Assembly (NCBI GenBank): GCA_964187785.1
Contig: OZ076411.1
Coordinates: forward strand, 42,284,001-42,348,000
Direction: 5' to 3'
DNA from: Amphiscolops sp. MND2022
Lineage: Eukaryota
DNA: 64,000 nucleotides
This document shows, piece by piece, positions 21,701 to 47,471 of the stretch. Below the pieces are notes generated by a model. That model was not told the DNA's origin, searched no databases, and saw only the letters and a program-made list of their open reading frames with translations. How positions within the stretch are numbered: the stretch's first letter is position 1; each line of letters starts with the position of its first letter. Position numbers and translations under genes: made by a program.

Positions 21701-24700
21701 GCATAAAAAACTTGTAGTTTAGTGCGAGAATCGAACCCACGATCTCCTGCTTCTCAGAAAATTAGTTGTGAAAAACTAAGCTTCTCAGAAAACAAATGAA
21801 CAAAAGATTGTAAAAAAAGTGGACCACTCAGAGTGAGATTGTCAACTGAAAAAAAAACAAAAAAACAAGACGGGATCGTCTCAAGTCGGCGCCATATCTA
21901 AGGCTCAAAATTATTCAAGGAACAACTATTGGAAACATTTGCAAAAAATTAATTTTTTTCAAAAAAATTATTTTTGAAAATTTTTTTTCGAAACAAGTAT
22001 TTTTTTAAGTCGCACAATGCCGAAAAACTCAAAAAGAAGGCATTCAGGCTCATTAAACGTTTTTACAAACCGAAAACTTCAAAAAAATGCAAGGGGGTAC
22101 CCTTTGATAGAATCCGAAAATTTTCGAAAAAAAGTCGCATAGTGCCGAAAAAAACCAAACAAAAAAAACGAAACGAAAAAAACCTTTGGTCTCGCATCTA
22201 CTTTTGGAAGCATAAAAAATTTGTGGTTTAGTGCGAGAATCGAACCCACGATCTCCTGCTTCTCAGAAAATTAGTTGAACAAATGAACAAAGATTGTAAG
22301 AAAAGTGGACCGCTCAGAGTGAGATTGTCAACTGAAAAAAAAAAACTACTCACTGTAAGCGTCGGGCTTTTTTCCTTAAGGGAAAAGGCGCCGACTAAAA
22401 ACACTGTAAGCGTCGTGCTTTTTTTCAACGAGGGGCGGCTAAAAAGAAAGACTCCGGTGATGTACACCGGTGAATATTACTTGTTCAGTGTTACTTACAA
22501 CTATTTACAGCCTCAATGTAGCAACGAATAATCAATCTAATTCTGAAATTCTATCATTAAATTTTGAAAAAAATATATTCCAGATGACAGCCAAATGTTG
22601 TCAGCAATTCAAGAAATCAGTGAGAACACGACTGATGTCAGTTTCACCACAGACTCCCTTCATATCCTACTAGCCACCAAGTCATCAATAGCAACAGTGG
22701 AAGATGCACCAACCTTCTTTTTAGCCGATTTCAAAGATTACAACTCCACACAAACGTTAAGCGCCACTCATATTACTGTGGTACCCAATCAAATCAGGGA
22801 TCTTCCACAGTTATCCATTCATTACTTTGTCGAGGAAACTCAAAACGGAAGCAGCTACATAGGTTAGTGTTATGAAATGAATCATGTCGAAGTTTAGTTT
22901 GTTTTTGAAGTAATAAACTTCGAATTCAGTTCTAATTTCAGCTTTAGTTTCGATTGAACAAAGTCCGTTCTTTTCAATTTTTTTGTTGTACTTCAGCTTT
23001 TTATGTCTAAAAGATTTGGCGTGACAAGCAAGCAGTTTTGCCCGAATTATCCACTTTTCTGTTTCCAAACCGTTTTTTGCCCACGAGCGAGAATCAAATA
23101 GGAGCTATTGAAAATTAAGGGAGCTTGTGGCGAACGTTGGCGTCTAATAAATTGCCTGCCAATCAAGATATCTTCTGAAATAACAACATAGTTTCAGTTT
23201 TCATGTAAAATCTTCAATTTCACCTTTAAATTCAGTTTACTTTTCAAAACTGTTAGCTCCGTTAGCATTGAATTTCACAACTGATAACTTTCAGTTTATA
23301 CCTAGTAGTATAGGTTACCTTGATTCCATTCTGAAATATGTATTCTTCGTTGAAATCGTAAAAGGATGTTACTCAGGATATTGTTAAACCGATAAAACGA
23401 AGCAAAAGACCATGAATTCCCTATCATAACTTCCAGATTAATTATCAAACGTTTTTCAAAAACATTTAATGCATACAAATTGATTTCTGCAACATTGATT
23501 TTTCAGAGTCTCCCATCAATTTGAGCGCAACGTGCTCAGGCAAGTCTACACACAGTGAGCAACAATCCGAACTAATACAGCAGCAAGTCAAGATGATACA
23601 GGAATGCAATGACGACGAATGTTTGATAGATCTCGGTTTGGATTTCTCTTCACATGAAACATCACCAAGTTCCCAGGACCTGCAGCAACATTCGGAGCTG
23701 AAGGAAGAACACAGCTGTATAATTTATTTAGTCTCGTTGTATGAATATATTGACTCATCGTTTGAGCAGACGCTTTCCTTAGCTATTTATAATTTGGATT
23801 GCAGCTTAACAGTTACCCGACCTCTGGTTAATGACATGCTTCTAATCATGCCTTACAACGATGCTATTGAAATATGTGACATGACTATACAGCCATGCAC
23901 ATCTTACCAAAAGGCGACTGAATCGAAGACCAGCACGCCCCAGTTTGAACTATCTGCGAAAGAAATTTGGGTCCCGCAATCCCAGTTTGTACAAACTGGT
24001 TTTGATCATATCCTTTTGAATTCAAACAGCAGCAACTTTTCTACTTTTCTTATGCAGATACTGGAGCAGTCTACGCCAGCCTTTGCACCTATGACGTGCA
24101 ACGGAATCATTCAACTTGAATTGGTGAGTTCATTGCATGGTGTTACGTAAAACACAACAGAGGGATCTGAACTTAGAAAATCGTCGTAGAAAACTTTCAC
24201 TCGTTTTGTCGAATTGGACAAATGATTTGTCCCATAAAAAACATGAAAATCCTGAATAGTTTCAATTCGCGCCCTGTCAAACATCAAACCAGCCTCTTCA
24301 GATTAATTGACTGAAAAAGTATCAGTAAAAGTATGTTTCCACCTTTAAATAATTGTAAGCTGAGTACTACATCTTTCAGACGGGGTTTTTACAGAGTGCA
24401 GAAAACCAGCAATGCCAGTTGTCCCAAGTGACCATCGACTCAAACTCAGCACACTTGCTGGCACAACAGCCGGAAGAGTATACTAAGTGCCTGGAGCCCT
24501 ACTCAGAGGATTCATACGAGCTCATTTGGTACAACAGTCAGCTCAGATGGCGTAAAGAGTTCTATGTGTTACATGTGCAAACAATGAAAGACCCCAAGGC
24601 CGAGGTCGTGAAAAACTTCAAACTGAAGCCGGCAGAAATGGTGACCAGTACTAAAATGGACGCTTTTTGTTCCTGTTTGATGGGCAGAAATTCCAGGAAT

Positions 24701-25362: not shown

Positions 25363-25609
25363 TTCAAAAATATCTACATTCATATGACTCTTTTCAACTC
25401 CACCTTACAAAGTTTGTTCCAAGCGGCTTTTTTCAAGTCAAAATATTCATTAAGTAGAAAAAAATTCTGATTCAATGCAAAGATCCTAATACAGTCACTC
25501 ACGTCTAATTTGGCTCAGTTCAATATTGCTAACCTCTATTGAAAACAACTAAAATTAAAACTTCAATTACAAGGGAATAGATATGCGTTTCATCGACGGA
25601 ATAGGGGAC

Positions 25610-25682
25610 CATCAGATTATTCATCAATCACAGAGACTTCCAAGGTAGAATTAAACTCGATGATGTCATCCGATATCTGATG
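25610..25682 (-). promoter_or_regulatory. SECIS element (type II-like) in the 3' UTR of GPx4 copy 1
   Basis: Minus strand: helix I catcagat/atctgatg; AUGAC...UGAU quartet; helix II atcatcgag/ctctgtgat with one mismatch; unpaired AA and an apical ttc/gaa mini-stem. It starts about 37 nt after the stop codon. Confidence 0.8.
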
Positions 25683-25718
25683 CTCCGAATAGTCGACTGG
25701 AAAGCTATCTGGGGCAAG

Positions 25719-26516
25719 CTACAGTAACTTCTCGATGTCAGGAATTATGTCATTTGGCGGTGTTCTGGGTCCATACCTCTGGACACAGATGCCGTTTCTA
25801 TCGACCAGGAACTTGGAGAAGTTCCATTTGATGGCATCGATCAGAGTTCCTCCCTGTTGCTTCTTTAAGAACACATAAAGCGGGTGTGCGTTTGAACCGT
25901 TGACATCAATTTTTGAAAACATGTCAAAATGCACATTGTATTGCTTGATGAAGTCCTTAATTTGTTGCTCAGTTCCGGGTTCTTGCTTTCCAAATTGGTT
26001 GCAAGGGAATCCGAGAATTCTCAGACCCTTTTCCCGGTACTTGAGGTCCATCGCACTCAATTGGGTATAATTGAGTGCAGTTAAACCTCATTTAGAGGCA
26101 ACGTTAACAATCAAACAAACATTTCCTCTGAACTTTTCCAAAGAAATGTCTTGTCCGTCTATATCTTTAACCATAAACTGGTAAATGGTTTTGGCTGTTT
26201 CTGCGTCGGTAGCCATGTTAGCTCTATAAATAGCGAATGAGGTAGCTCTGAATAACAATGGTCCACGAATAACCTGATTTTCAGGAGTTGCTGAATTGCC
26301 TTCCAAAAATGGAGTCCTGTTCTGGACAACAGCAAGGGCTCGTTGAGAAACTTGTGCAGTTGTCCTGATGTTAAGACAACTTTTTGTCACTCCAAATGAC
26401 TTGTAAGTGCTGTTGCTCGCAAATCCAACAGCTGTTAGTCGAGTAGCAGCAATGTTTGCGGTTTCAACAAGTTCAAATCTGTAAAGAACATACCAAACAA
26501 GTCTGAACGCTTTCAT
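25719..26516 (-). CDS. GPX4: Selenocysteine glutathione peroxidase, GPx4/PHGPx-like, copy 1 (intronless)
   Basis: ORFs 26088-26558 and 25719-26060 are in one frame joined by TGA (26088-90): NVASK-U-GLTALNYTQL. GPx motifs FPCNQFGKQEPG and KWNFSKFL are present. ATG 26516 gives 265 aa; ATG 26216 (MATDAETAKTIYQF) gives 165 aa. Confidence 0.93.
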
Positions 26517-27055
26517 ATTTATGTTCAAGCAAAACGTCGAAAGCGGACAAGAAGTCAAAGCTAAAGGACATCAGTGACAGTAAAACAGAGGAACGACGTT
26601 TGTTTGGGATCAAAATGTGTCGTAGAAATGAAAATGTCATCAACATTTTCTTCAAGTTTGACAAATACGTCTCAAAAAATTACTTTCTCCACAAAATTTA
26701 ACATTTTTCTAACTGAGCAGCGTTTGATTCAATGATAGCTTCTTTAAATTTTTCCAGATAAACAATTTGCAGACATCTCTGGCCCAAATATTCAGATGAT
26801 GAACATGAATTACAGGAATAATAGCCAATTTAGTGGTAACTAACCACCCAATTGAATTGTTCCCAAGTGTATGAACACAAAATAACAAAGAACTTTTCGG
26901 TGACGCCCAACAAAACCTTAAGAACAATCAATCTCTTGAACTCGTCTTTTTTTACCATATTAGCCAATTAACAATCCAACCGGCATACTTATTCAGTCGA
27001 GACGATTGAAGATGATGAATTCAAAGCATCATACTTCCTTGCTAAAAAGCCCAAG

Positions 27056-28420
27056 TTTGAATTTTTCACACTCTATTAGGATCCATTTACACTGTTTACA
27101 GCAAAATTTCGAAAACATTAGCTAGAACTCGCCATGAGCGCTTCCTGATTGACCATGCACTGCTTTGATTAAACTTCAAAATTGAACTTTGATAAAATAG
27201 GCCCCTTCGGGGCTCAGTACTATTTCTGCTTTAATCTTTATTTTTTTTGAAACAAAAAAATCATTAATAAAAGAATCATATCTGGAATACCAATACACTC
27301 CTGTTTAATCATTACTTAGAGCACAATTAATCACTGTAGTTTGAATTTTTCACACTCTATTAGGATCCATTTACACTGTTTACAGCAAAATTTCGAAAAC
27401 ATTAGCTAGAACTCGCCATGAGCGCTTCCTGATTGACCATGCACTGGTTTGATTAAACTTCAAAATTGAACTTTGATAAAATAGGCCCCTTCGGGGCTCA
27501 GTACTATTTCTGCTTTAATCTTTATTTTTTTTGAAACAAAAAAATCATTAAAAATAGGCCCCTCCGGGGCTCAGTACTATTTCTGCTTTAATCTTTATTT
27601 TTTTAAAACAAAAAATCATTAATAAAAGAATCATATCTGGAATACCAATACACTCCTGTTTAATCATTACTTAGAGCACAATTAATCACTGTACAAGTTT
27701 ACACCGCCTTTAATTCTTCTCGGACTAAAGAAAATATAACTAAGCGTAGACGAAGTTTCGCATTCGCATTTGAATGCAGGCGAAGCTCTCAACGAACGAA
27801 TAATTAACACTCATTCGCTTCATCTCAATGACGTCAGCATACGAATGGATAATTACCACTCGCTCGTTCTATCGCACTAGAATTGAATTGTTGTCGGCAG
27901 CTTTCCCACGCTTACACTCACTGCCGAACAAAATATCTGAATTATTCAGTAGGACGAAATTTGACGACTGAAAAAAAAAAGGACCAACTTTGAGGTTACA
28001 ATAACATTCCTGCTAAAGCAGAAATATTAATAAAAGAATCATATCTGGAATACCAATACACTCCTGTTTAATCATTACTTAGAGCACAATTAATCACTGT
28101 ACAAGTTTACACCGCCTTTAATTCTTCTCGGACTAAAAAAAATATAACTACTAAGCGTAGACGAAGTTTCGCATTCGCATTTGAATACAGGCGAAGCTCT
28201 CAACGAACGAATAATTAACACTCATTTGCTTCATCTCAATAACTCGGGGCAACGAAAGCACAATTACGAACATTCGCTCGCTTCATCTCAATGACGTCAG
28301 CATACGAATGGAAAATTACCACTCGCTCGTTCCATCGCACTAGAATTGAATTGTCTTCGGCAGCTCTCCCGCTTACACTCACTGCCGAACAAAATATCTG
28401 AATTATTCAGATCGTCCGAA
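27056..28420. repeat. Nested tandem duplications of a dispersed repeat (homologue at 49.56-50.17 kb)
   Basis: 284-bp direct repeat at 27056 and 27340; aaataggcccct-cggggctcagtact occurs three times; about 27600-27930 is repeated at about 28020-28410. Confidence 0.8.
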
Positions 28421-31029
28421 AAATTGTTCTGAAAAAAAAGTAGGCGTTTCCAGATTTCAATAATATTCCTGCTAAAGCAGAAATATTAATTAAAAAGCTT
28501 CAATACTTCTATACTGAAAAAAAGTAAACGCGAATTGGAAATTTTTGCAGGACCAAAAACATTGGCAGTTACACGGCATCATTCGTCAGGCAATTTGTTA
28601 AACAGAGTAAAAGTAATTTCGTAGAACTAGAAGTACCAACGACCAGATTTTGAACAAAATTGAACTTCAAACATTGGAGAGCTTGCAGGTCTGTTCCATC
28701 AAGATTTCGGAAAAAGTTACTTATAGTGCAAACATGAAAAACGTTCAATCCGGGGCTCAGTAAAATTCTGCAAACGCAAAAAGCCAAAATATATCGTAAG
28801 ATAAACTGTATAATTTTGCGGGAAAAAGGCTCGAACAGCAGTTTTAGTCAGCTCTTTTTGAAACAAGACGCCCGCTGAGCAGCGAGATATTTTCCGCCCC
28901 AGAACTGTTCTACAACTATATAAATTTGAGACTCAAGAATAGCCAATGCACTATGAAAAAAAGTTCGAAGAAAAAAGCTTTCATTCATCTTAGTCCATTT
29001 TTGAAGGCAACACCTAATTTATTATTTCTGCAATAGCTGTTCACTTTTTGTATTTTCGGCACTATGCGACTTACCGCGTGAAGAGAAACTTTTCGAAGAC
29101 AACTTTCGAAAAATATTTTTCAAAAATTTTAGTTTTTGAGGTTTTCTGTAAAGGAAATAAGTTTCCCGAGATTTCCCGAGTAACCCTTTTGTTACTTTTG
29201 ATACTTTGGAACTGATGAGTTCTCTTGATCATTGTGGAAAATGCCATTTTCATTTTTGTTTTTGGGTCATTCTCATGTTTTCTTCCTACGTGGGAAACTG
29301 CAAAAACATTTTCCTTTTGAAGGTTTACTCCATATCTAGTGATTTTGCTTGGAGCTTTTTGAATATTAAATATTTCACAAATAAGGTCAAAAAAGAATTT
29401 TACGTTGTCAAATAAATTCTGACACCTTTGTTGTAAACTCGAAGAACTTCATCGTACTTTCTTTCCCAAATTGCGTTTTGAATATTGTTTCAGCGTTCAG
29501 GTAAATGGAATTTCTATTCCACAAAACTTTCGTAGTTTGAACAAAAATTTCGACTTTGTCAAAAAAACGTGCTTTTTTGTCGTTTGTTGGATTTTGGGGT
29601 GTTTTTGAGGCCAATTCCAGAAACATTGCAGTTATATCTTCAAAAATGCCTACTGGATACCGGGATTAGTCATTACTAAGTTTTTTAAACCTCTTTATGC
29701 AAGGAAGTAGCTTAAAAGTTGTACAAAAAAGTGCAAAAAAGGTTTTTTAAATGAAAATTCTCAGTTTTTGCATTATTTGGGTCATTCTGAGGAAACTTTC
29801 TGCCATAAAATATGCAAGTTTCTCTTCAAAAAATGTGCTGCGGACCTAATTTTATCATCTTAAGCTTTTCGAAGCTTTTATTTTTGTAATTTTCCAATGG
29901 CAAAAGTTTCTAGTCTCAAATAAAAATTCACTGGAAATGTCAGAAATAGGCAAATTTCGACTTTTCGCGGTCAATTCTGACCATTTTCCAACCGAAGTCT
30001 GCAAATTTTTCCTCAAGAGCCTACGAAAGCTCTCGGAATTTGTACAGAAATTGCATCAAAACGACAAAAACTTTAAATTTATTGACATTTTCTGAGTCAA
30101 TTTGAGGAATTTTCTATTACAAATGGTATTTATCTCTCGACGAAAGCTCAATGAAACGAGGAGTACTGCCATTGTTTAGGGCTTTTAATATTCTAGTCCA
30201 CGAAGTCTATCGATAATTTGACAAAAACTGCATAAAAGTTTGAACATTTTGTCTATTTCAGTGCCAATTTGAGATATTTTTCAACTTCAAAACCGCAATA
30301 ATCTCTTCATAAAACACTACTGGACAACAAATCCTAACTTTGATGACCGTTTTCAACATTCCAATCCACGAAGTCTGTGGAAATTTGCATAAAAACTTTG
30401 AAAGTTTGAAAAATTTGGGTTTTTTGTCTATTTCTATGCCAATTTGAGATATTTTAAACTTGAAAACCGCAATTATCTCTTCATAAAAGGCTACTAGACA
30501 ACGAACCTGTTCCTCGTCAACTCTTTTCAACATTCCAATATACGAAGTTGACAAAAATTGTGTACTACACTGTACTCCAAAATTTTTGGATTTTTAACGT
30601 TTCTAGTAGAAACGTTAAAAATCCAAAAATTTTGGAGTTTTTGTCATTTTTGGCGTAATCTTTCTTTTAGAAAACCGCATTTATCTCTTCATAGAAGACT
30701 ATTGGACAACGAACTGGGTCATTATGGGGTCATTTTCGTCATTCCTAGAAAAGTCCAAAAATCTCCACAAATACATCTCACGAAGCTAAATTTACGTGAG
30801 TTGAATTCTATGGGTAACACCCTCTATGGTGAATATAAATTTCGTGCTTGGCAAATTTTGTAAAAAACCGTTTGATTTAAATATTTTCCTTTCCCATATG
30901 AAATATGGGCGGAAAATAAAAAAAAGGCAAGATTCTTACAGTGGCAAGATTCTTCAAATTGTCACTGTAGAGGACACTTCTATTTCATGATGTATTCTAT
31001 AATACCCAGAGGAAATTTCAAGTGAAGAT

Positions 31030-31100
31030 CGATGAACTAGTGGTTCGGGTGCCTGCTTTGCAAACAGGAGGTGGTGGGTTCGAATACCCCGCAGGACAAA
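31030..31100 (+). mobile_element. tRNA-Ala-like SINE head or pseudo-tRNA
   Basis: tagtggtt (A box), gcctgctttgcaaacaggagg (Ala-TGC-like arm) and ggttcgaatacc (B box). The acceptor stem does not close. Confidence 0.5.
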
Positions 31101-32144
31101 TTTTGTTTCAAGTTTGCAAAGCTAGACTGTCACGAGGTTTTACGTTTTTCCCCGCACTGTTAACTCAGTTAAGGATAAGCATTTTTGGAGTCTCAGGGGT
31201 GCCCCATTCGGGAGTTTTTTGAAACTGTGAAATTGATAATCGTTTTCGAGCATATTTAGAAGACTATTTTGAGACTTAGGCTGGGCGCCGACTTGGACTG
31301 TTACCTGCTTTTCATTTTTATACGATTTTTAAAGCTTCAACAACTGCTCCGTAAGACGCAAAAAATGCTCTATATACCAAATTCGTTTTTTATATCAAAA
31401 CGCTAATGGTATAGTTTATTTTGAGATCCTAAGTTTACTTGATCCTGAGAAGTCCAGAGTCTTCTGTTTCCAAAGGAAGCAAACTAACCACTAGACCCAG
31501 TAGACCTCGATACACATTTTTGCTTAAAATTTAATTTTTCCGGCAATTCGTTGGGCTTTTAAAAGTCATTGCAAAAGTCTATTCTTCCTTCGAAAACGAC
31601 GGAAAAAGAACAAAAACGCACCAGTGTATGCAAATGGAATAAACTCAAAAACCATGAAAACTAAAAAAAATCAAACATGCATCTCACAGATAGCAATGAA
31701 ATCAAATGCATTCGAGGGACAAATATAACTACTCAACTACTTCACCAGCACAAAAACAAACAATAGCTGAACCATCATTTTCCAACTTGCAGGTGCTAAA
31801 CGAGTTCGCCAGAGGGAAAAGCGGCGGCATTTCCGAATAACGTTTGCTGCTGTTTCACAATGCCCCGCCATGTGACTGTTTTGAGCTTCTTTGACGTACG
31901 TCAGTCAAAAATACCCAGATGATTTCGGAATAGTTTTCTCCTCATGTTCAATGAATCTATCTGGTGAACAGCGTAGCTTCAAAACATAACACCATGTCGT
32001 TATTATTCATTTGGACACCTAATTGTAAGGAGGGATTTGGATTGGACACAAAATAGCTCGAAACCAGTGTTATTTTGCAAGCAATCAAAAATTTCGTGAG
32101 CAAACATCACCCAGTTTGCATACAGTAATGATTCTACTAGAAGC

Positions 32145-33767
32145 GGTGTGTGTTTATTTCACCCCACGTTTGAAACTATTAAATGCGGTTTAGTATCATT
32201 TCACCCGACGTTCATTTCACCCCACATTTAAATTATCAAATAGGTCTCAGACTATCGGATTACTGACTACTGCCACACAATTTCAATCTAAGCGATAAAG
32301 GAAAAACGTCTTGAATCTAATTAGCAACTGGATTATCAAACGATATTTGTTATGATATACAAAAACGGAGCCCGAAAAATTTACTCAGAATTTTATTACT
32401 TCACACTCTTGAGCAAAGTTCACTTATTCAGTAAATCGTGAAAAAGCAGTTCTTGTTGCCAGGAAACGTAATTTTCTGCACCAAACTTGTCGAAACGGCG
32501 CCGTTTACGGCACGCAACAGCCAAAAACGGCAGGATAAAAAACTCAATATTACCGACTAAAATGTCAATTAGATCATTGACAAATCAGTTTTAAACTTAA
32601 TAAACAATTTTTTGGCGGTTTCTTCCAGCATATTTGGCCGTTCTTCGATGAAAGATTTCAACCCCGAGAAAAATCTTTCCAATTCAACAGAAGTTACACA
32701 GGAGCGAAAGTGAAAATGCCAATATCAGAAGGCTGTGTAATTTCCTGGCCTTTCGAAATTTTTATCACTTTCAATAAGCCTTTGTTTTTTTGAAGAACAC
32801 TTTGAAATTTCTGCAGAGCAATTGCGCCAAACTTATTTAGGGTTTTCTTCAAATCAATTGATTTCTCTTCGATTTCCTGAACATCGTTTGACGCATTGGG
32901 AGCACAATAGTTCTGGGATTGGCTTCTCTTTATATAAACTATCAAAAAGCTCAAATTTTTCATCAATCCAACTTCAGCCATATTCTCAGAATTTTCCATT
33001 TGTCCCAGTGCAATTTTGGACATTTGGCAGTCGCTCTGTGTTGCAAGAAAATCTTTCAGTTGAGTCCAGTTTTTGCTTACAAACTGGATTGTTTCCAAAA
33101 AGGCGCCCCATCTAATTTTTGTTGGAACAGGATAGGTCAGATTTTCCGGAACACGAAAATGCTTCAAAGCATGTCGTCTGATAGCACTTTTAAAGATTTT
33201 GTTCAGACTTTTCACCAGCGGTTTGAGACAAGTTTTTTCCACAATTTCGCAAGCAACCCGAGCCAGCAAATGCGAGAAACAAGAAACATGTTGCATTTCA
33301 CAAATATTTTCTTTCAACATTTGTGCTGCGAGAATTATAAGCTGCACTGTCGGTAACAAAAAGTCTGAATTTCGAACTCGCGTCATCTCGTCCCAATTTG
33401 GTCAAAATTGTTATTATTCTGGTAAAAACTGTAACGCCAGTTGGTGTACGAAAATCTTTTGTCATGTCGACCAGAAACGTGAAACGAATAAATAATATAC
33501 AATCAGATCTCACAAGATCACGAGATTGGCTGAAACGGCATTTCACGGCACGAGGGCACATGCCGTTAAATTACGTTTCTTGCGTACTCGGATGCTGCGA
33601 AATTTTTTCAGAAATTTACACATTTCGTTTTATTACTTATGTATGGCCAGAACATGGCAATCAAATTAAAACTAAGTCAAATTTAAATATTAAGCTCACT
33701 TATAATTGGTTAATTAAGGCGACACACACGCTTCAATAATTAAAATGTGGAGTGAAATGATAAACTG
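32145..33767 (-). mobile_element. Decayed transposase-bearing element with family B (catttcacccc) termini
   Basis: 32188-32340 is the reverse complement of the right end of 9624-10646. ggagtgaaatga lies at about 33750. tagaagc flanks both sides (32138-44 and 33768-74). Confidence 0.65.
32569..33561 (-). pseudogene. hAT-superfamily transposase, DUF659/CGGBP1-related type, two frameshifts
   Basis: Repaired reading: LFVTDSAAY-ILAAQMLK...QHVSCFSHLLARVA...PVPTKIRWGAFLE...FAP-TSVELERFFS. This gives the D, CxxH, TRW-like and hAT C-terminal ERxFS motifs. Frameshifts are near 33340 and 32695. Confidence 0.85.
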
Positions 33768-34205
33768 TAGAAGCAACAAAGCACTCGAAGAGGGCAAATA
33801 AACATAACTCATTGGCTAATTAAGGTCTCACGCACTCATTTGATTGGTTGAGAGCTATTTTCAAAACATCATTTTTTTTAGTTTTCTGCATTTTCGTCCC
33901 ATTGATACATTTTCGATTTCTAAGTAGTTTTAACAAAAATTCTCCAGAACAAGTTGAATCTGACAAGACAATTTTTAATTGGAAATATTGTAAATTGTAT
34001 TAGTATGAGCTTGTTTTAAGTTGTTGAATTCCGAAGTCCTTGTCTTAATACATGGTATTTCGAAAAGCCCAATTTTACAGCTTGTTTTGCTACGATTTTA
34101 CAATTTCTAAATCAAAACATATTAGGGGCTTCGGTAAATTCATTGGTGTTCGGTCCATTGAATTTGAATTTCTCAAAACTTTTGAGCAAAAGTAGATCAA
34201 AAGTG

Positions 34206-34740
34206 AAACAAGCCGGGAACGGCCCAAGTCGGTGCCATATCTAAGGCTCAATAAGACTCGAAAACCATTTTTTTCTACAACTGGAGACAAAAGCTCTCAA
34301 AAAACTAAAAATTGAGGAAAAAATTTTTCCGAACTTTTTTTCGAAGTTTCTTTTGAAGTCTCCGGTAAGTCGCATAGTGCCGAAAAATGTAAAAGGGGGG
34401 ACCCTTTGGAATTTTTTGAACATCCATTCTGTCGCAAAATATCAAAAAACTGATGGGGGGAGCAATAAAAAAATTTCGGAAAAAAATGAGAAATTTCGGA
34501 AAAAATGAGAAACTTGAAAAAACTCATAGTGCCAAAAAAGGTGGAAAGTCTCATAGTGTCAAAAAAAGTGGAAGGGGGGACCCTTCTGCTTTGGAATGGC
34601 TTTTTATCTCATGTTAGAGGCTTTGGATGCGTTTAAAATGAAGTACTAAGTACATATGGTAAAAGTGCGTAATGCACAAAAAGTGGACCGATCGCGTTTA
34701 ACTGACGAAAAAAACTAGCCACTGTAAGAGTCAGGTTTTT
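34206..34740 (+). mobile_element. HINE-like element
   Basis: aacaagccgggaacggcccaagtcggtgccatatctaaggctc start and gggggaccct core; the 3' hairpin is degenerate. Confidence 0.6.
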
Positions 34741-35434
34741 CTTCGAAAACACCCACTCAAAACCTGAAATTTGCACTAATTTGGCTAAAAATGGCCTATG
34801 GTTACTTTTATTTTCATCGCACAATTTTGAAACATGCATTTGTAAAGTAAATGAAACTAAAAATTTTTAAATTCATTTTTCAAAACTCACTGGCGGTTTT
34901 GAGATATTCGATTGAGATTTGCCGCCTGTTGCTTTTTATAGAATCACTACTATAGACACTTCAGAATCAGTGTTGTCAACAATTTTGTAGTTCGCTTATA
35001 AAATTTTCCAATGTTTGAACATACTATTTCCGGATCCTGGAACAAGTTTTTGCAAATTCACGTCCCACAGAACGAGTTTTCAATTTTTGTATTATGGATA
35101 GAATCTACTGCATCCACTGAAGCCGATAAAGCGTTTTGTTTAAGAAAATGTCGGAAATTTATATCTTGGTTTTCTTGAAGTTGAATTTTATATATCATCT
35201 TGGTGCATTGCATTATTAATGTTTTTTCTCTCTGGAATGTCTTGTTCAAGTTTTTTTTTAGAATTTCGTAATGAAAACCACCAGTGGGTACTTTTGTTGA
35301 GAAACATTTGAAATATTGAAAATATAGAGAAAAATTGCCGTCTTCACTTTCAAAACTTTGAAACGAGGTCAGTGATACTATTCCTTTTTTGTCGGAGTTC
35401 AAATACTTGTTCACAATCAGGGGTCCAATATTAT

Positions 35435-35858
35435 GGCTCTTCTCTGTTCCTCTCATCTTTGAAATTTTTTCAATATTTTTTAGCCTTCAACATTTCATAT
35501 AAAATTTCTGATAATGGAAATTAAACTCAAATGAATGAGATTTACGTTTGAACTTGAAAATTTCACATTGAATTCGATCAAACCAATTGTTTTTTAGTCA
35601 CGAGATACAGCCGTTGACTTTTCAAAACTTTTCATTTGATGATTTTGGGACTCAAAAAGGAAACTGTTGATTTCCTAATCAAGAATGCGTGAAAAAATGT
35701 GAACAAAATTTGTATCTGGATCCTAAACTGTCACCCTGAGAATAAATTTATTTAGTTGAAGGTTTTTGGTTGAGTTTCAAGCTTTTTTGTTCGGATATTT
35801 TCACTAACTTTGCAAAGAAAATTTGGCAGCGGTGGTGGTGGTAGGGGAGCAAAAAAGA
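35435..35858. mobile_element. Older copy of the ggctcttttctg hAT-type MITE
   Basis: The body aligns with 35950-36361. Termini are degenerate and no clear TSD is seen. Confidence 0.5.
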
Positions 35859-35949
35859 ACCCAGCTCTGAGAGACAATTTTCATAACTATCAGAAACTTC
35901 GATTATACTTTCGAAATCACAAAACAACTGTTCTCACTTAATAGCCTTC

Positions 35950-36361
35950 GGCTCTTTTCTGTTTTCCCCCCCACCACCAAAATTTTTGAAAATAACTTTC
36001 CTTAAAAACATTAGACTAACCTTATTAAAAGTAAAACCTTCTTTCATAACAGGAAGTTAACTTCTATTAGAGTAGTTTTCCGCTTGAACAAAACATTGTT
36101 CACACATTTTCACTATAATTATGTTCGTATTAAGTGTTTTTCGATGACTCAAAACAGGAAGCTGTTGATTTCTTCATCAAAAATGCGTGACTGCATAGGG
36201 AAAAAGTGTGAACAAAGTTTGTATCTGAATCCTAAACTATCACCCTTAGAATAAATTTAAAACTGAAGCTTTCTTGTTTGTATCCAAGTCTATTTGTTAT
36301 AAGATTTTCACTAATTTTCCAAAAAAAATTTTGGTGGTGGGGGGGAAAACAGAAAAGAGCC
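35950..36361. mobile_element. hAT-type MITE with an 8-bp TSD
   Basis: TIR ggctcttttctgttttccccccc / gggggggaaaacagaaaagagcc. TSD tagccttc at 35942-49 and 36362-69. Confidence 0.9.
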
Positions 36362-36444
36362 TAGCCTTCTCACAATCATGACAAGACACCACTTTCTGAA
36401 ATCTTCTCTATTCAGTTGATTTTAGAATAAATAAACTATAAAAT

Positions 36445-36508
36445 ATGCCCAAACATCAGTCGACCGTATCCCAACAGGGTTCAACGATCAACGTCATCAC
36501 TGGAGCAT
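36445..36508 (-). promoter_or_regulatory. SECIS element (type II) in the 3' UTR of GPx4 copy 2
   Basis: Minus strand: atgctc/gggcat helix I; AUGAC/UGAU quartet; 9-bp helix II gttgatcgt/acggtcgac; unpaired AA; ccc-tgtt-ggg mini-stem. It starts 12 nt after the stop codon. Confidence 0.88.
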
Positions 36509-36520
36509 TTGAAAGAGCAA

Positions 36521-37218
36521 TCATTTACGCATATCCTCACCGAGCAACCTTTCGATGTCCTTTACCATGTCCACAGGCGCCCTTTTCAGTCCAAACTTCA
36601 TCCTGGGCACGCCTTTGCGATCGATGAGATACTTGGTGAAGTTCCAGTAACATCTGCCCAGCTTGCTGCTCAAGAATGCAAACAGAGGGTGCTGGCCACA
36701 ACATGTAACTTTGATTTTGGCAAACAGATCGTAGGTGACATCGAAAGTTTTCACGAACCTTTTGATTTCTTCGTTGCTCTTGGGCTCCTGCATAAACTGA
36801 TTGCAAGGGAAAGCGAGAATCCTCAAACCACGTTCCTCGTAATGATTATAGATCTCTTGCAGTTGAACGTAATTCTCAGTGCTTTTTCCTCATTTCGAAG
36901 CAGTGTTAACCACTATACAAACGAGGCCTTGATATTCTCCAAGCGAAACCTTGTGTTCGTCAATGTCTCGAACTTCAAACTAAGCTCACGTTTTTTCCTT
37001 TTTACTCAATTTTGACAAATTTCAAAAATGGAAGAAAAGACGCAACACTTGTTTAGTTTATTACAAGTCTTGTATCCAAAATTTGCAAACTGGAGTAAAA
37101 CAACCTCTCTGAATGGCTCATTTCCGAAGTTAATGGCAGGGAAAGAGTAAAAAGGGAAAGTTGCCTGATATATCGTGTCCTGAACCCGAGGCTTATCAAT
37201 AGGACCAACATCCACCAT
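36521..37218 (-). CDS. GPX4: Selenocysteine glutathione peroxidase, GPx4-like, copy 2 (divergent, 170 aa, two exons)
   Basis: Exons 37218-37165 and 36979-36521 with a 185-nt GC-AG intron (CAG|GCAACT...CTTAG). The join gives QDTIYQ|FEVRDID, matching KTIYQFMVKDID in copy 1. In-frame TGA at 36890-92: VNTASK-U-GKSTENY. FPCNQF-QEP and WNFTKYL are present. Confidence 0.88.
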
Positions 37219-37595: not shown

Positions 37596-37998
37596 GGCTC
37601 TTTTCTGTCCCCCCCCACCAAAATTTTTGGAATTCAATTTCCTTAAAAACTTTAGACTAGCCTAATTAAAAGTAAAACCTTCTTTCATAATGGGAAGTTA
37701 ACGTCTATGGGAATAGTTTTTTTTTGCTTGAACTAAACATTATTCACGCTTTTTGACTATAATTATGTTCGTATTAAGTGTTTATTGATTACTCAAAACA
37801 GGAAACTGTTGATTTCTTCATAACAATGCGTGACTACATATTGAAAAAAACGTGAAGAAAGTTTGTATCTGGATCCTAATCTGTCACACTAAGAATAAAT
37901 GTAAATTTGAAGCTTTCTGGTTTGTATTCTTTTTGTTATAACATTTTCACCAATTTTTCAAAAAACTTTGGTGGTGAGTGGGGGAACAGAAAAGAGCC
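37596..37998. mobile_element. hAT-type MITE with an 8-bp TSD (same family as 35950)
   Basis: TIR ggctcttttctg / cagaaaagagcc. TSD cactagtt at 37588-95 and 37999-38006. Confidence 0.9.
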
Positions 37999-38615
37999 CA
38001 CTAGTTGACACAGCTTCGTAAATTGGCCAGTTTACACAAGCGGAAATTACAGTAATTGACTAGTATATTTAATATTTTCGAAATATTAATCAATACCCTC
38101 GTTATGAGAAAAATTCAGCGAGTATTTGTTTTAATATAAAACAGTTGATTTGACCTGATTCATAGTCAAAAATTGTGATGTTTCATTTGTATTATTTCAG
38201 TCAAAAATTAAATTCAGGCTGCGAGCGTATTGATTCACAATGAAAGATTTATTTAGCCTAATTGTTGTGATAAACTTATTAAATAGATGTGATATGTAAG
38301 CCCGGACACTCTGGATTGGGTAGCCCTAATTCTACATAGGGATTTCAGTGGCCGGCATTGTATGCTAGTGCTGCTTCAATAGACGATTACAGCTCCTGAG
38401 CTTTTATTTTACCCAGTGGTGCGGCGAGGCACAAGAAGGAGTATCAACAACCGACACAACCCCTTCACAGCCAGGTTGTTTCACTCCTATATTTCTTTTT
38501 AATTACCTTCTCACCTGAATTTTATCTTTTAAATTTTAATCGTTTCTTTTTTAAATTGAATTCTTTTTTATAAAAATCAAATGATCTTCCGATACTGCTC
38601 CGCTTCTGTTTCAGG

Positions 38616-39175: not shown

Positions 39176-42100
39176 ATGTCATCAAATCAAACACACTGTA
39201 GCATTTGTCATACCCACCTACGGAATCGAGGAGTGTGGTGCGCCGTATGCGGTTACGTTCACACTAAATGCAGTGGTCTTTCCGCGACAAAAAACTGGTC
39301 GAAAGATTTTGTTTGCGTTCGCTGCTCTGGACCCGAAGCATCGCCCACAGCTGAACCATCTGTCGTAAACATACAGAGCCAAGCCAACGACCCGGAGCTC
39401 GATATTGGGATCACTCCGGGGGATCAACAACTCCTCAGAAGTCAACTAGATGGAGAGCCAACTGCTGATAGCTTCTGGACAAACATCACTCCAGAGAAAG
39501 TCTCCCAAATTCGTTATTTTTACAACCAAGTAGTCCACTGGAAACCGCAATTCATCACTTTACCCAAAAACAAAACAGGACACAAGTTTATAGAAACAAT
39601 GAACTGCCTTATGACACCACTTGCAGAGAACAGTAGCAAAGCAAACATAGCTCTCTATGCAGCAATGCTTTTCCCCCACCTAATATTAGCGAGAACCAGC
39701 AGTGAGCCCGACACGTCTCGAAACCAAGTTACCACAAGGAGACTTAGAATGTGGCTGACGGGTGAAATCGAAGAACAATTTCACGAGGCAGAAGCATTAC
39801 AAAAAAGGTCAACAAAACAGAAGTCGAGTAGAAAGAAGGATGAACTCAGAGAATTTGATGCACACATGTCCGCGGGAAAAATTTCGAATGCTCTGAGATG
39901 TATCAACGACTGTGAGAAAGGCGGCGTTCTCTCACTGACAGAGAAAATCGATAACAAAGCTGTCCTCGACATCTTGAAAGAGAAACATCCCCCCGCCAGT
40001 CGTTGCGATGACCGTTATATAGTAGAAAAACCGTCAAACGTCACACCCTACCACCCTGTTATTTTCGACAAAATCCAAGGCAGGATTGTTCGTAATGCCG
40101 CGATGAAGACGCACGGAAGCCACGGACCCTCCGGCGTGGACGCCAACGAATGGCGGCGCTGGCTTTCCAATTTCAACCAATCGTCGACATCACTATGCCG
40201 CACAGTCGCGCGCATCGCGATAAGAATCGCCACTGAAGAAATCGATAGTGAATTCCTAGAGCCTTACAACGCCTGTCGCTTGATTCCACTAGACAAAAAC
40301 CCAGGCGTAAGACCCATCGGTGTTGGAGAAGTTCTGAGACGTATCATAGGTCGAAGCATACTCCGATGCATACAGAATGACCTGAAGCTCCTCGGCACAA
40401 ACCAGCAACTACGCCTCGGTCAAAAATGTGGAATCGAACACGCCATACACAGTCTCCGGAACGAGTTCGAGAAAGCAGAAGTTGAAGGCATTCTGCTCAT
40501 TGACGCAAAGAACGCTTTTAACAGTCTGAATCGAGATCTAGCGCTGCGAAACATTGAAAAAATGTGCCCATCAATCGTCACGGCACTAAAAAATTCTTAC
40601 AAGTCACCAACTAGTTTATTCGTCAATGGAAAAATACTGCAATCCCAAGAGGGCACAACCCAGGGAGACCCTCTTGCCATGGCAATGTACGGGATAGCTA
40701 TTTTGCCATTGATTGAACTTGTGCAAAATCCAAAAGTCACTCAAAAATGGTATGCCGACGACGGTAATGTTTCCGGTAGCCTGGACGACCTGAAAGTCGT
40801 ACATGATAAGCTGAAACAACACGGCTCGGCGTTCGGATACACACTAACTAAATGCAACATCATTACCAAAACTGAGAATATCAATCAAGCTGAAAAACTG
40901 TTTAACAGCAGCGAAATTGAGATTGTCAAAGGACACCGTGTCCTCGGCTCGGTAATCGGTTCAGAATCATCGTGCAATGAGTACAAACGTCAGAAACAAA
41001 ACGAGTACATTGGAGTTGTCGAAAAGCTATCAAAACACGCTAAAACATCGCCACAAAACGCGTACCACTGTTTCGCTAAAGGACTTCAGAACAAGTTAAC
41101 ATTCTTATCCCGTACTACACCTGCAATCTTAGAAAATCTTCAAGAAACCGAAAAACTTATTAAGAACAAATTGATACCGGCTTTGACAGGCAAGCAAGAA
41201 GTTTCCGAAGACGACCGCCTCCTGTTTTCTCTACCCGTAAGGGACGGAGGTCTAAACATAAGTCTACCCGACGACCGACAGCAAGAAATCAACTGGTCCA
41301 GAGAAATGTCGTCATGTTTAGAAAATGATGATGCGGAACTGCAACAGACTGTTGTGATAAAACAGATTCGAAAAGAGAAATCTTCAAAAATCAAGGAAAA
41401 AATGGCTTTTTTGAAGGACAGACTTCACGAAAACCAACGATACGCTTTAGATCTTGCCGCTGAAAAAGGCGCCTCGAGTTGGCTGAACACGCTGCCACTG
41501 AAGCGTTATCACTTCGACCTGACAAAAACTGAGTTCCGCGACGGTTTAGCCCTGCGCTATGGCTGGGAACCACTGAAAATACCGGCAATATGTCCATGTG
41601 GAGACACCTTTAGCCTGTCGCATTCCCTCCAATGCAACAAAGGTGGTTACACACAAATGCGACATGACGAAATTCGAGACACTTTCGCCGCCATCATGAA
41701 GGATGTCTGTTTTGATGTCGAAATCGAGCCGAAGCTTCAGCCGTTAGAAGGCGAGTCCTTCGTTCATAAAACCACGACAACTGAAGACGAAGCAAGACTA
41801 GACATTAAAGCCAATGGACTCTGGGATTCACGTTTTTGCCGAACTTTCTTCGACGTAAAAATTTTTAACCCACTAGCCAAATCATGCCCGAAAGATATCA
41901 ACGAGGCATACAAGTTCCACGAAACACAGAAGAAGCTCAAATATGAGTCGCGAATAATCAACGTTGAAAAGAGCACTTTCAACCCGCTCGTATTTGCCTG
42001 CACTGGCGGAGCTGGACCATCAGCCACGAAAGTCATAACCAGACTTGCGTCAAAGGTCAATGAAAAAAGCACCGAAAGTTACTCTGAAGCCATTAGCTAT

Positions 42101-42232
42101 ATCCGAACCAAAATAAGCTTCGCCCTACTCCGCAGCTGCGTCCTCTGTCTAAGGGGCTGTAGGTCGACTCGCTGTCAACCAGCCATGGAGTCTTCGATTA
42201 GCGCTGTTGTCCACGAGGGAGGGCTGTCATGA
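39176..42232 (+). CDS. Retrotransposon ORF2: PHD finger + reverse transcriptase + CCHC knuckle + restriction-like endonuclease (1018 aa)
   Basis: N-terminal C4HC3 (CSIC...CAVC...HTKC...CVRC). RT motifs RPIGVGE, IDAKNAFNS, QGDPL and WYADD. C-terminal CPCG...H...C, RHDEIRD, RLDI and FFDVK. Confidence 0.93.
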   Translation: MSSNQTHCSICHTHLRNRGVWCAVCGYVHTKCSGLSATKNWSKDFVCVRCSGPEASPTAEPSVVNIQSQANDPELDIGITPGDQQLLRSQLDGEPTADSFWTNITPEKVSQIRYFYNQVVHWKPQFITLPKNKTGHKFIETMNCLMTPLAENSSKANIALYAAMLFPHLILARTSSEPDTSRNQVTTRRLRMWLTGEIEEQFHEAEALQKRSTKQKSSRKKDELREFDAHMSAGKISNALRCINDCEKGGVLSLTEKIDNKAVLDILKEKHPPASRCDDRYIVEKPSNVTPYHPVIFDKIQGRIVRNAAMKTHGSHGPSGVDANEWRRWLSNFNQSSTSLCRTVARIAIRIATEEIDSEFLEPYNACRLIPLDKNPGVRPIGVGEVLRRIIGRSILRCIQNDLKLLGTNQQLRLGQKCGIEHAIHSLRNEFEKAEVEGILLIDAKNAFNSLNRDLALRNIEKMCPSIVTALKNSYKSPTSLFVNGKILQSQEGTTQGDPLAMAMYGIAILPLIELVQNPKVTQKWYADDGNVSGSLDDLKVVHDKLKQHGSAFGYTLTKCNIITKTENINQAEKLFNSSEIEIVKGHRVLGSVIGSESSCNEYKRQKQNEYIGVVEKLSKHAKTSPQNAYHCFAKGLQNKLTFLSRTTPAILENLQETEKLIKNKLIPALTGKQEVSEDDRLLFSLPVRDGGLNISLPDDRQQEINWSREMSSCLENDDAELQQTVVIKQIRKEKSSKIKEKMAFLKDRLHENQRYALDLAAEKGASSWLNTLPLKRYHFDLTKTEFRDGLALRYGWEPLKIPAICPCGDTFSLSHSLQCNKGGYTQMRHDEIRDTFAAIMKDVCFDVEIEPKLQPLEGESFVHKTTTTEDEARLDIKANGLWDSRFCRTFFDVKIFNPLAKSCPKDINEAYKFHETQKKLKYESRIINVEKSTFNPLVFACTGGAGPSATKVITRLASKVNEKSTESYSEAISYIRTKISFALLRSCVLCLRGCRSTRCQPAMESSISAVVHEGGLS

Positions 42233-42926: not shown

Positions 42927-43439
42927 CTAATTTGTGGCATTGGATTCAGCATCACCATGATTCTTGTGACCATTTTTTGGCTTGGGTGGAATGATTGTAA
43001 CCGGCAAATGAACATGATGCAGCACAAAATCACTGATACTGCCCAGAAACGTTCTTCTCAATACCCCCATGCCTCGGTTGCCCATGATAATGTAGTCAAT
43101 ATCTTTTTCCTTGGAAACATGGCATATGGCCTCGCCGGCATGTGCGAAATGACTGCTTGAAACAAACTCACCTTTGATCTTGGAGCTGGCCAAGATAGTT
43201 TCGAATTTCTTTTTCAGGTCATGGACTTCTTTTTCCTTTTCTTTCAACACAGCTTCAATGCTCGATAAAGGGAGAGGTCCCGCCGAGTAAGCTGGAAAGA
43301 CTCCGGCCGTCTCTACCACGTGGAAAAGGGTAAGATGATCTCCAGCCATCATTCCATACTTTAGAAACCAATGCACGGCTCTCTCTGAATGCTCGCTTTG
43401 ATCAACAGGAATCAAAACTTTTCGTGTCACAGCAGTCAT
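42927..43439 (-). CDS. Universal stress protein (UspA-like domain), intronless, 170 aa
   Basis: KVLIPVDQSEHSERA...LFHV...GEAIC...DYIIMGNRGMGVLRRTFLGSISDFVLHH, including the G-xx-G-x9-GS ATP-binding motif. Confidence 0.92.
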   Translation of the reverse strand: MTAVTRKVLIPVDQSEHSERAVHWFLKYGMMAGDHLTLFHVVETAGVFPAYSAGPLPLSSIEAVLKEKEKEVHDLKKKFETILASSKIKGEFVSSSHFAHAGEAICHVSKEKDIDYIIMGNRGMGVLRRTFLGSISDFVLHHVHLPVTIIPPKPKNGHKNHGDAESNATN

Positions 43440-46827: not shown

Positions 46828-47471
46828 ATTGTTATTATTCTACGACGCAGAGCTTTGACAATCTTTTTAACACAGTGGTACTTGTGTAACGTTATAATTA
46901 TAAGGCCCGCTTAAGGCTCCAAAATTGCTTAAGTCTTTCGTAGGTGCTTCGTTTTTTGTTTCATAGGTGATGTAAAAATGAAGAAAATTCAAAGAAAGGA
47001 GCCTTTCCCCTCTGTTAAAGTACAGTTTTGTTCTTAGGTCAAAGCCTATCGGTTTCGTCACATTCGTGTGTCTCATGATGATGAGTTATGTGCGGTTTTG
47101 TCTTATTCAATGATGTATGGCTTATATTTTACATCATCAGTTGCCTGTAAATCCATGATATTAATTATAATAAAGAAAGTAACTAATAGGCTGGCAAACT
47201 GAAAATGCCGGCTTAAAGCATAATTGAGAAGAAGTTTTCCGACAGCGAACCGGCTACAGGAGTCTTGTCAGTACCAGTATAACCAATCAGCATGTTATCA
47301 GAACGCCTGAGAACTTTTTTGTTGGAATAGAGATGGACTAAAATCGTCTAAAATTTTCGAAAAAATTCATATTTTACACGAAATTCACGAAATCATGATC
47401 TTCAAAAAAGACTCTTTATCACTCCGCTTAATTTTTAGGCTCTTTTCCGGATACCACACATTTAGCAAGAA

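What the first reader, a model, noticed from the sequence alone, without database searches (positions are those of the whole stretch)
25610..37218. Duplicated pair of selenoprotein GPx4-like genes, each with its own UGA-Sec codon and SECIS
Seen: two co-oriented GPx genes about 10 kb apart both have TGA exactly at the catalytic position, and each has a hairpin with the AUGA/UGA quartet and apical AA just after the stop. The two SECIS elements share structure but little sequence. Established: this is the eukaryotic Sec recoding signature. Inference: a lineage-specific expansion of Sec-GPx4 that standard pipelines would truncate or split, as the ORF track does.
Basis: partly seen in the sequence, partly recalled or inferred. 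Interest (0 to 1): 0.8.

Follow-up and report, generated by a model that had tools for sequence, protein, structure and literature searches.

The report
Two selenocysteine GPx4 genes in an acoel
This acoel flatworm genome has two neighbouring but anciently diverged GPx4-type antioxidant enzyme genes that each read a UGA "stop" as selenocysteine using their own 3' RNA hairpin; this is the normal animal mechanism, newly documented here and mis-annotated by gene finders.

Summary
Two co-oriented minus-strand GPx4-type genes lie about 10.3 kb apart. Each has an in-frame TGA exactly at the catalytic position. Each has a type-2 SECIS-like hairpin (AUGA / unpaired AA / UGA) starting 24-50 nt after its stop.

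- **TGA is retained.** It is kept in every orthologue found in related acoels, including one contig from an RNA library.
- **The frame after TGA is constrained.** dN/dS after the TGA is 0.025-0.05.
- **The hairpins are conserved.** They show compensatory base-pair changes between species.
- **The Sec machinery is present.** The genome carries four tRNA-Sec(UCA) genes, SepSecS and selD/SPS exons.
- **TGA is otherwise a stop.** It ends one neighbouring gene and GPxB itself.

The two genes are 43% identical, so this is an old pair and not a recent duplication. The tandem arrangement recurs in a relative, and GPxB is syntenic in Convolutriloba macropyga. Whether the duplication is acoel-specific is unresolved (AU p = 0.16).

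GPxB is a divergent subfamily with a Cys-Cys motif and a shortened loop before WNF. In this genome only, it carries a 185-nt candidate GC-AG intron that is not verified by RNA.

Rfam's SECIS model scores GPxB below threshold and misses GPxA. Gene callers do truncate or skip the Sec region.

Verdict: genuine, ordinary selenoprotein genes; new members of a known kind. Another first-stage note on this window (s1-189816) made the same points about GPxB.

The parts
25719..26216 (-). GPxA coding sequence. Single exon, 165 codons (42 + Sec + 122). ATG 26216-26214, Sec TGA 26090-26088, TAG stop 25721-25719.
   Evidence: Sequence. Pfam GSHPx on both pieces. Best solved relatives are GPX4. Orthologues at 92-93% identity keep the TGA.
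25606..25688 (-). GPxA SECIS, type 2. AUGA 25669-25666, unpaired AA 25652-25651, 3' UGAU 25626-25623. Helix I is 8+3 bp, and there is an apical mini-helix.
   Evidence: Folds. 97% of cells paired, with 2 compensatory pairs over 3 species. Found by the rule-based scan. Not reported by Rfam SECIS_1.
37165..37218 (-). GPxB exon 1, 18 codons, ATG 37218-37216.
   Evidence: Matches the first 18 residues of the intronless orthologues P0121 and P0122.
36980..37164 (-). 185-nt candidate phase-0 GC-AG intron of GPxB, or alternatively a disabling insertion. It is absent from the orthologues.
   Evidence: Alignment with L007. Translations. Single copy in the genome. One haplotype contig changes the donor GC to GA. 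No RNA evidence.
36521..36979 (-). GPxB exon 2. 29 codons + Sec TGA 36892-36890 + 122 codons + TGA stop 36523-36521.
   Evidence: Sequence. Pfam GSHPx. GPX4 best among solved structures. TGA unchanged in a relative's contig from an RNA library, with 29 of 32 listed differences at third codon positions.
36445..36508 (-). GPxB SECIS, type 2. AUGA 36497-36494, unpaired AA 36481-36480, 3' UGAU 36458-36455. Helix II is 9 bp.
   Evidence: Fold z = -2.5 to -3.0. Rfam SECIS_1 at 17.4 bits is the top hit in the 3' UTR. Five compensatory helix-II pairs against C. macropyga. Found by the rule-based scan.

Best explanation
Both loci are genuine selenoprotein genes of the GPx4 (phospholipid-hydroperoxide glutathione peroxidase) type in an acoel, a relative of Convolutriloba (family Convolutidae).

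**Mechanism (inferred from the known eukaryotic pathway).** In each mRNA the UGA at the catalytic position is decoded as selenocysteine by tRNA-Sec(UCA). A type-2 SECIS hairpin immediately after the true stop codon directs this, by analogy through SBP2 and eEFSec. The products (165 aa and about 170 aa) carry the Sec/Gln/Trp/Asn catalytic tetrad and reduce hydroperoxides.

**History.** The two genes are an old tandem pair. GPxA is slowly evolving and canonical. GPxB is a fast-evolving, divergent paralogue.

**Shown here.** The TGA, its conservation, the purifying selection downstream of it, SECIS structure and covariation, and the presence of tRNA-Sec, SepSecS and selD.

**Inferred.** Actual Sec insertion, expression in this species, splicing of the GPxB intron, and substrate specificity.
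For: - **TGA position.** The in-frame TGA sits at the catalytic position of Pfam GSHPx in both genes.
- **Subfamily.** The best solved relatives are GPX4.
- **TGA conservation.** Orthologues in three other assemblies or runs keep the TGA; their gene callers wrote it as W. A contig from a related species in an RNA library covers the GPxB TGA unchanged.
- **Selection.** dN/dS after the TGA is 0.025-0.052 for GPxA and 0.032 for GPxB. Differences concentrate at third codon positions on both sides of the TGA.
- **SECIS.** All seven orthologous 3' UTR hairpins fold to the same architecture, with invariant AUGAC and UGA cores. Compensatory changes: 2 pairs for GPxA and 5 pairs for GPxB. The rule scan finds just these two sites plus one weak one in 128 kb. 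A covariance model built from the GPxA SECIS alone finds the C. macropyga GPxB SECIS at 27.5 bits, E = 1e-4.
- **Machinery.** tRNA-Sec in four copies at 66-72 bits with a UCA anticodon, SepSecS at E = 5e-128, and selD exons.
- **Genetic code.** Five neighbouring genes have no internal TGA and end in TAA, TAG or TGA.
- **Assembly.** Independent DNA contigs of three runs agree with the window at both codons of GPxB.
Against: - Rfam SECIS_1 reaches only 17.4 bits (gathering score 35) for GPxB and reports nothing for GPxA, even in a 206-nt search.
- The GPxA-derived covariance model gives the window's own GPxB SECIS only 11.8 bits, E = 1.4.
- No RNA run of this species was found, so transcription, 3' ends and splicing are unverified.
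- My rule-based scanner was written after I had seen the hairpins.
- GPxB needs a non-canonical GC-AG intron to be intact. One haplotype has GA at the donor.
Confidence: 0.9

Rival explanations
1. GPxA is a working selenoprotein gene, but GPxB in this particular genome is a recently disabled copy. On this reading the 185-nt insertion between codons 18 and 19 is not spliced. It brings an in-frame stop, and there is no downstream ATG before the Sec codon.
For: - The insertion is absent from the orthologues L007 and L008/L009.
- Its donor is GC rather than GT, with C at +5.
- The sequence before the acceptor is purine-rich.
- One haplotype contig (X4) has GA at the donor.
- There is no RNA evidence.
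Against: - The insertion sits exactly at a codon boundary, begins with GC and ends with AG. Its removal restores perfect collinearity with the orthologues.
- The remaining 170 codons have no frameshift or stop.
- Pairwise dN/dS with L007 is 0.03.
- The SECIS is intact.
- The insertion is not a repeat family member.
Confidence: 0.2
2. The TGAs are ordinary stops, and the loci are truncated or decaying GPx pseudogenes or split ORFs.
For: - Generic ORF calling splits both genes at the TGA.
- This genome's own called product P0003 is a post-TGA fragment.
Against: - Strong purifying selection in frame after the TGA.
- The TGA is conserved in all orthologues of both genes.
- The SECIS is conserved with covariation.
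- The Sec machinery is present.
Confidence: 0.02
3. TGA is a reassigned sense codon (for example Trp or Cys) in this lineage, so no Sec is involved.
For: Metagenome gene callers translated the orthologues with W at this codon.
Against: - GPxB itself and a neighbouring gene end in TGA.
- Five neighbouring genes have no internal TGA.
- In L007 a TGA ends the conserved protein, where the caller's read-through adds unconserved residues.
- The TGA falls only at the catalytic position, and a SECIS follows.
- tRNA-Sec(UCA) is present.
Confidence: 0.01
4. The pair is an acoel-specific duplication of one ancestral Sec-GPx4, rather than two lineages inherited from an older bilaterian ancestor. This rival concerns the history, not the mechanism.
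For: - The genes are in tandem and co-oriented, here and in a relative.
- GPxB-type sequences were found only among close relatives.
- The AU test does not reject an acoel GPxA+GPxB clade (p = 0.16).
Against: - The free tree does not join them. Both arise from a polytomy, and GPxB has a stem of 1.2 changes per site.
- They are 43% identical.
Confidence: 0.45

Closest known systems
Vertebrate GPX4 / PHGPx (for example human GPX4, PDB 2OBI, 2GS3)
   Same: - The best solved-structure matches for both genes (E = 2e-41 for GPxA, 1e-24 for GPxB).
- Monomer-type length.
- Sec at the same position, with Gln, Trp and Asn of the tetrad present.
- SECIS in the 3' UTR.
   Different: - The acoel genes are intronless (GPxA) or have one candidate intron (GPxB). 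The conserved multi-exon structure is reported for GSH-dependent PHGPx genes in PMC2679728.
- No coding signature was found for an N-terminal (mitochondrial-type) extension.
- The SECIS lies unusually close to the stop, at 24-50 nt.
Platyhelminth Sec-GPx (Schistosoma mansoni GPx, PDB 2V1M / 2WGR) and other invertebrate Sec-PHGPx (PMC2679728, PMC9925728)
   Same: - Invertebrate GPx4-type selenoproteins with a UGA/SECIS, similar in length.
- E = 1.4e-40 (GPxA) and 4e-24 (GPxB) to 2V1M and 2WGR.
   Different: - They come from a different phylum.
- My literature searches found no report of acoel or xenacoelomorph selenoproteins.
Rfam RF00031 SECIS_1 / eukaryotic type-2 SECIS
   Same: AUGA...AA...GA core, helix I, internal loop, a 9-bp helix II, an unpaired AA followed by a mini-helix.
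   Different: Scores fall below Rfam's gathering threshold (17.4 against 35 for GPxB, no report for GPxA). In GPxA the AA lies 13 nt after the AUGA.

Membership tests
Glutathione peroxidase (Pfam PF00255 GSHPx) | Significant match to the family profile over its full length | tested here: met
   GPxA pieces score 35.6 and 100.4 bits, and the GPxB C-terminal piece scores 79.2 bits, all above the 27-bit cut-off. The 29-residue GPxB N-terminal piece scores 19.8 bits, below it. Whole-locus matches score 149 and 109 bits with one internal TGA each.
Glutathione peroxidase (Pfam PF00255 GSHPx) | Catalytic tetrad: Sec or Cys, Gln, Trp, Asn | tested here: met
   The alignment shows Sec (TGA) in the VAS-K-U-G motif, Gln in the QEP motif, and Trp-Asn in the WNF motif. 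All are present in GPxA, GPxB and their orthologues.
GPx4 / PHGPx subfamily | Closest to GPX4 rather than GPx1-3 or GPx7/8, and lacking the oligomerisation-loop insertion | tested here: met
   The top solved matches are GPX4. GPx1, GPx3 and GPx7 are 20 or more orders of magnitude weaker. In the tree both sit within the GPx4-type set, though unresolved.
Eukaryotic selenoprotein gene | In-frame UGA conserved in orthologues, with a constrained reading frame downstream | tested here: met
   The TGA is kept in L005, L006, L007, L008/L009 and the X1 contig. dN/dS after the TGA is 0.025-0.05.
Eukaryotic selenoprotein gene | Sec actually inserted (75Se labelling or Sec peptide) | not testable with these tools
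   This needs wet-lab work.
Eukaryotic SECIS element | AUGA/GA non-Watson-Crick quartet flanked by helix I and helix II, with unpaired AA in the apical loop or bulge | tested here: met
   Folds and anchored parsing of seven orthologous elements. The rule scan was specific.
Eukaryotic SECIS element | Structure maintained by compensatory substitutions | tested here: met
   GPxA has 2 double-sided changes and 97% of cells paired, against 28-48% when the partners are slid. GPxB has 5 double-sided changes in helix II between the window and C. macropyga. Few sequences were available, so the statistical power is low.
Eukaryotic SECIS element | Passes a curated covariance model (Rfam RF00031 gathering score 35 bits) | tested here: not met
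   GPxB scores 17.4 bits, E = 0.65 over 4227 families in a 201-nt search. GPxA was not reported at E <= 10. SECISearch3 was not available.
Eukaryotic SECIS element | Lies within the 3' UTR of the mature mRNA | tested here: inconclusive
   No RNA run of this species was found. The 939-nt Logan contig L006 of a relative carries the CDS plus the SECIS, but its library type is unknown.
Sec-decoding organism | tRNA-Sec(UCA), SepSecS and SPS present in the genome | tested here: met
   SBP2, eEFSec and PSTK were not searched.

The most novel reading that the evidence does not exclude
GPxB defines an acoel-restricted, fast-evolving Sec-GPx4 subfamily with remodelled surroundings of the active site.

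- A vicinal Cys-Cys replaces two residues of the canonical VNG-loop motif.
- There is a 5-6-residue deletion just before the WNF motif.
- One residue is lost from the NQF-G-x-QEP motif.
- In C. macropyga the FPCNQF motif is also changed.

These changes may have shifted its reductant or substrate use, for example a selenenyl-sulfide resolved by the Cys pair and thioredoxin-type recycling. In the window's species the gene has just gained a GC-AG intron.
Probability: 0.2. Interest if true: 0.45.

Novelty: new member of a known kind. Interest (0 to 1): 0.28.

Why it matters
It documents that acoels keep the full Sec-decoding trait and several Sec-GPx genes. Acoels are a key lineage for early bilaterian evolution, and my literature searches found no selenoprotein reports for them.

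It also gives concrete cases where current annotation is wrong. One product is truncated to a 110-aa fragment. In C. macropyga the Sec exon part is spliced out of the model. Correct models matter for redox and ferroptosis-related comparative work and for selenoproteome surveys.

Mechanistically nothing new is implied.

Tried and rejected
- **N-terminal extension of GPxA.** I asked whether GPxA has a mitochondrial-type N-terminal extension. The roughly 85 codons upstream of the ATG are open in all three species, and their indels are multiples of three. However, the relatives have no upstream ATG, dN/dS is 0.6-1.3, and substitutions are spread evenly over codon positions. Rejected as coding.\n- **The 185-nt GPxB insert as a mobile 'introner' or MITE.** It is single-copy in the genome.\n- **The insert as a decayed duplicate of the N-terminal exon.** There was no Pfam match at E <= 10.\n- **Rfam scans.** No SECIS hit over the whole window at gathering thresholds or over 13 kb at E <= 10. 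Only a targeted 3' UTR scan gave the weak GPxB hit.\n- **ARAGORN.** It did not call the tRNA-Sec genes; Infernal did.\n- **RNA evidence.** No RNA run of the species was found. The runs laid on GPxB were DNA-like contigs containing the intron, plus one relative's contig from a seawater metatranscriptome.\n- **Covariance model from the GPxA SECIS.** It did not significantly recover the window's GPxB SECIS.\n- **Phylogeny.** It could not decide whether the duplication is lineage-specific.
Full report
**Setting.** The window is G000:C3:42284001-42348000 of a 1.07-Gb animal genome with 34-46% G+C. The closest named relative of its proteins is the acoel Convolutriloba macropyga (lineage). That species' published assembly is 1,176 Mb (PMC13650328), so the window belongs to a different acoel, probably a convolutid. 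Genes in the window are largely intronless single ORFs: acyl-CoA dehydrogenase, a CN-hydrolase, an AKAP7-like protein, a universal stress protein and a GIY-YIG/SLX1 protein.

**Observation.**

- GPxA lies on the minus strand. Its ATG is at 26216, an in-frame TGA is at 26090-26088, and the TAG stop is at 25721-25719.
- GPxB, also on the minus strand, has an in-frame TGA at 36892-36890 and a TGA stop at 36523-36521.
- The pieces on either side of each TGA match Pfam GSHPx positions 1-32 or 4-32 and 34-108 or 35-107. The TGA therefore occupies the catalytic position. The whole-genome profile search reports both loci as single matches with exactly one internal TGA.
- Among solved structures both genes are closest to GPX4.
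- The alignment shows the Gln, Trp and Asn of the catalytic tetrad in both.

**Is the TGA read through?**

- *Conservation of the TGA.* GPxA orthologues were found in an ENA assembly (L005) and in a 939-nt Logan contig (L006). They are 92-93% identical in protein and have TGA at the same codon. GPxB orthologues keep it too. These are L007, on the same ENA contig as L005, and L008/L009, whose product matches the NCBI C. macropyga protein apart from that model's 20-residue internal gap.
- *RNA-library contig.* A 627-nt contig from a seawater metatranscriptome covers 36535-36934 at about 91% identity. It shows no change at the TGA. Of the 32 listed differences, 29 fall on third codon positions, on both sides of the TGA.
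- *Selection.* Nei-Gojobori estimates give dN/dS of 0.025-0.052 for the 122 codons after the TGA in GPxA, and 0.032 in GPxB.
- *Genetic code.* TGA is otherwise a normal stop. Five neighbouring genes have no internal TGA, and one of them, like GPxB itself, ends in TGA.
- *Assembly.* DNA contigs from three runs of the same organism agree with the assembly across GPxB.

**SECIS elements.**

- Each 3' UTR folds into helix I, an internal loop with AUGA, helix II, unpaired AA, an apical mini-helix, and UGA on the 3' side. GPxB folds better than shuffled sequence (z = -2.5 to -3.0); GPxA does not (z = -0.8).
- Parsing all seven orthologous elements anchored on the core shows an invariant AUGAC, a 3' UGA and a 9-bp helix II.
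- For GPxA, 97% of cells pair, against 28-48% when the partners are slid. Two pairs changed on both sides.
- For GPxB, five of the nine helix-II pairs differ on both sides between the window and C. macropyga and still pair. Helix I is entirely different in sequence yet paired.
- A scanner encoding generic SECIS rules found three sites in 128 kb. Two are exactly these elements, and they have the longest helix I. Shuffles give 1.8 sites per window. The scanner was written after I had seen the hairpins, so it is supportive rather than independent.
- Rfam's SECIS_1 is weak here. It gave no hit at gathering thresholds or at E <= 10 in a 13-kb search. GPxB scored 17.4 bits as the best family in a 201-nt search. 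GPxA gave nothing.
- A covariance model built only from the three GPxA elements found the C. macropyga GPxB element as its sole non-self hit in 223 kb of searched sequence (27.5 bits, E = 1e-4). It scored the window's GPxB element at only 11.8 bits.
- The curated-model criterion is therefore not met. The structural, positional and comparative criteria are met.

**Machinery.** The genome has four tRNA-Sec genes at 66-72 bits with a CUUCAAA anticodon loop, giving the UCA anticodon. It has an intact SepSecS ORF (E = 5e-128) and selD/SPS exons.

**Gene structures.**

- GPxA is a single exon of 165 codons.
- The long upstream ORF seen by the ORF lister is open in three species, but it shows no coding signature.
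- GPxB orthologues are single-exon. In the window, the first 18 codons (37218-37165) are separated from the rest (36979 onward) by 185 nt that begin with GC and end with AG, in phase 0.
- The insert is single-copy and has no GPx similarity.
- It is most simply a recently gained GC-AG intron. However, no RNA of this species was available. One haplotype contig has GA at the donor. A young null allele or pseudogene therefore cannot be excluded.

**History.**

- GPxA and GPxB are 43% identical.
- In the ENA relative they lie on one 64-kb contig about 28.7 kb apart, in the same order and orientation as here.
- In C. macropyga, GPxB follows acyl-CoA dehydrogenase and GIY-YIG/SLX1, as in the window.
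- Each clade has 100/100 support, but both emerge from a polytomy of GPx4-type sequences, and GPxB has a very long stem.
- Forcing an acoel GPxA+GPxB clade costs 2.3 log-likelihood units (AU p = 0.16).
- So the pair is old. A duplication within acoels is possible but unproven.
- A second tandem pair of GPx1/3-like loci on contig 7 includes an exon with TGA at the catalytic position.

**Comparison with the known.** Sec-dependent GPx4/PHGPx genes with a SECIS are widespread in animals (PMC9925728; PMC2679728). My full-text searches found no report on acoel or xenacoelomorph selenoproteins. The product called for this genome is a 110-aa post-TGA fragment (P0003). The NCBI model of C. macropyga GPxB lacks the 20 residues around the Sec (P0123 against P0122).

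**GPxB features.** GPxB-type sequences share three features. A Cys-Cys pair replaces two residues of the VNG loop. The loop before WNF is shortened. One residue is deleted from the NQF-x-QEP motif. The same features were noted separately by a first-stage reader (s1-189816). Their functional meaning is untested.

**Verdict.** These are real, correctly observed and ordinary in mechanism: two anciently diverged Sec-GPx4 paralogues, new members of a known kind. There are two small open points: the status of the GPxB intron, and the specialisation of GPxB.

Noticed in passing
L003 (G000:C7:44156567-44159800) and L004 (G000:C7:44135756-44138992): A second tandem pair of GPx loci, about 21 kb apart, of the GPx1/3 type and multi-exon. 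In L003 an upstream exon has TGA at the catalytic position (NVAS-Y-U-G), so the genome has at least three Sec-GPx genes. Its SECIS was not looked for.
   Followed up: partly
window 26217-26516 (minus strand), with L005 and L006 upstream regions: The 5' leader of GPxA is an in-frame open stretch of about 85 codons in three species, and its indels are multiples of three. However, the relatives have no ATG there and dN/dS is about 1. It is a conserved leader rather than a demonstrable extension.
   Followed up: yes
window 37163 (+ strand G>T in run X4): A haplotype contig differs at three positions over about 1.06 kb. One change turns the proposed GC donor of the GPxB intron into GA, which would make a possible splice-null allele.
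   Followed up: no
window 36300-36370: Directly downstream of the GPxB SECIS lies a very high-copy repeat. Summed contig depth is 10^5 or more, with hundreds of contigs ending there. Similar G/C-run plus T-run motifs recur at about 35800-35880 and 37907-38008.
   Followed up: no
window 30574-30639: A near-perfect 65-nt AT-rich palindromic hairpin gives sub-threshold hits to several miRNA families on both strands. It is probably a foldback or MITE terminus rather than a miRNA.
   Followed up: no
window 42927-56713 (minus strand); L008/L009 1-4200: The gene order acyl-CoA dehydrogenase, GIY-YIG/SLX1, GPxB is conserved with C. macropyga. In the window a universal-stress-protein gene and a reverse-transcriptase element (39176-42232) lie between SLX1 and GPxB.
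   Followed up: partly
G000:C13:15629505-15699675: A dense array of at least 18 sub-threshold tRNA-Sec-model hits (40-46 bits) within 70 kb. It is probably a tandem array of another long-variable-arm tRNA. It was not inspected.
   Followed up: no
window 23831-23880 (+): The only other hit of my SECIS-rule scan. It is weak (helix I of 4 bp, 7 of 8 pairs in helix II) and lies inside a 209-aa ORF with no Pfam match. This is consistent with the expected chance rate.
   Followed up: no
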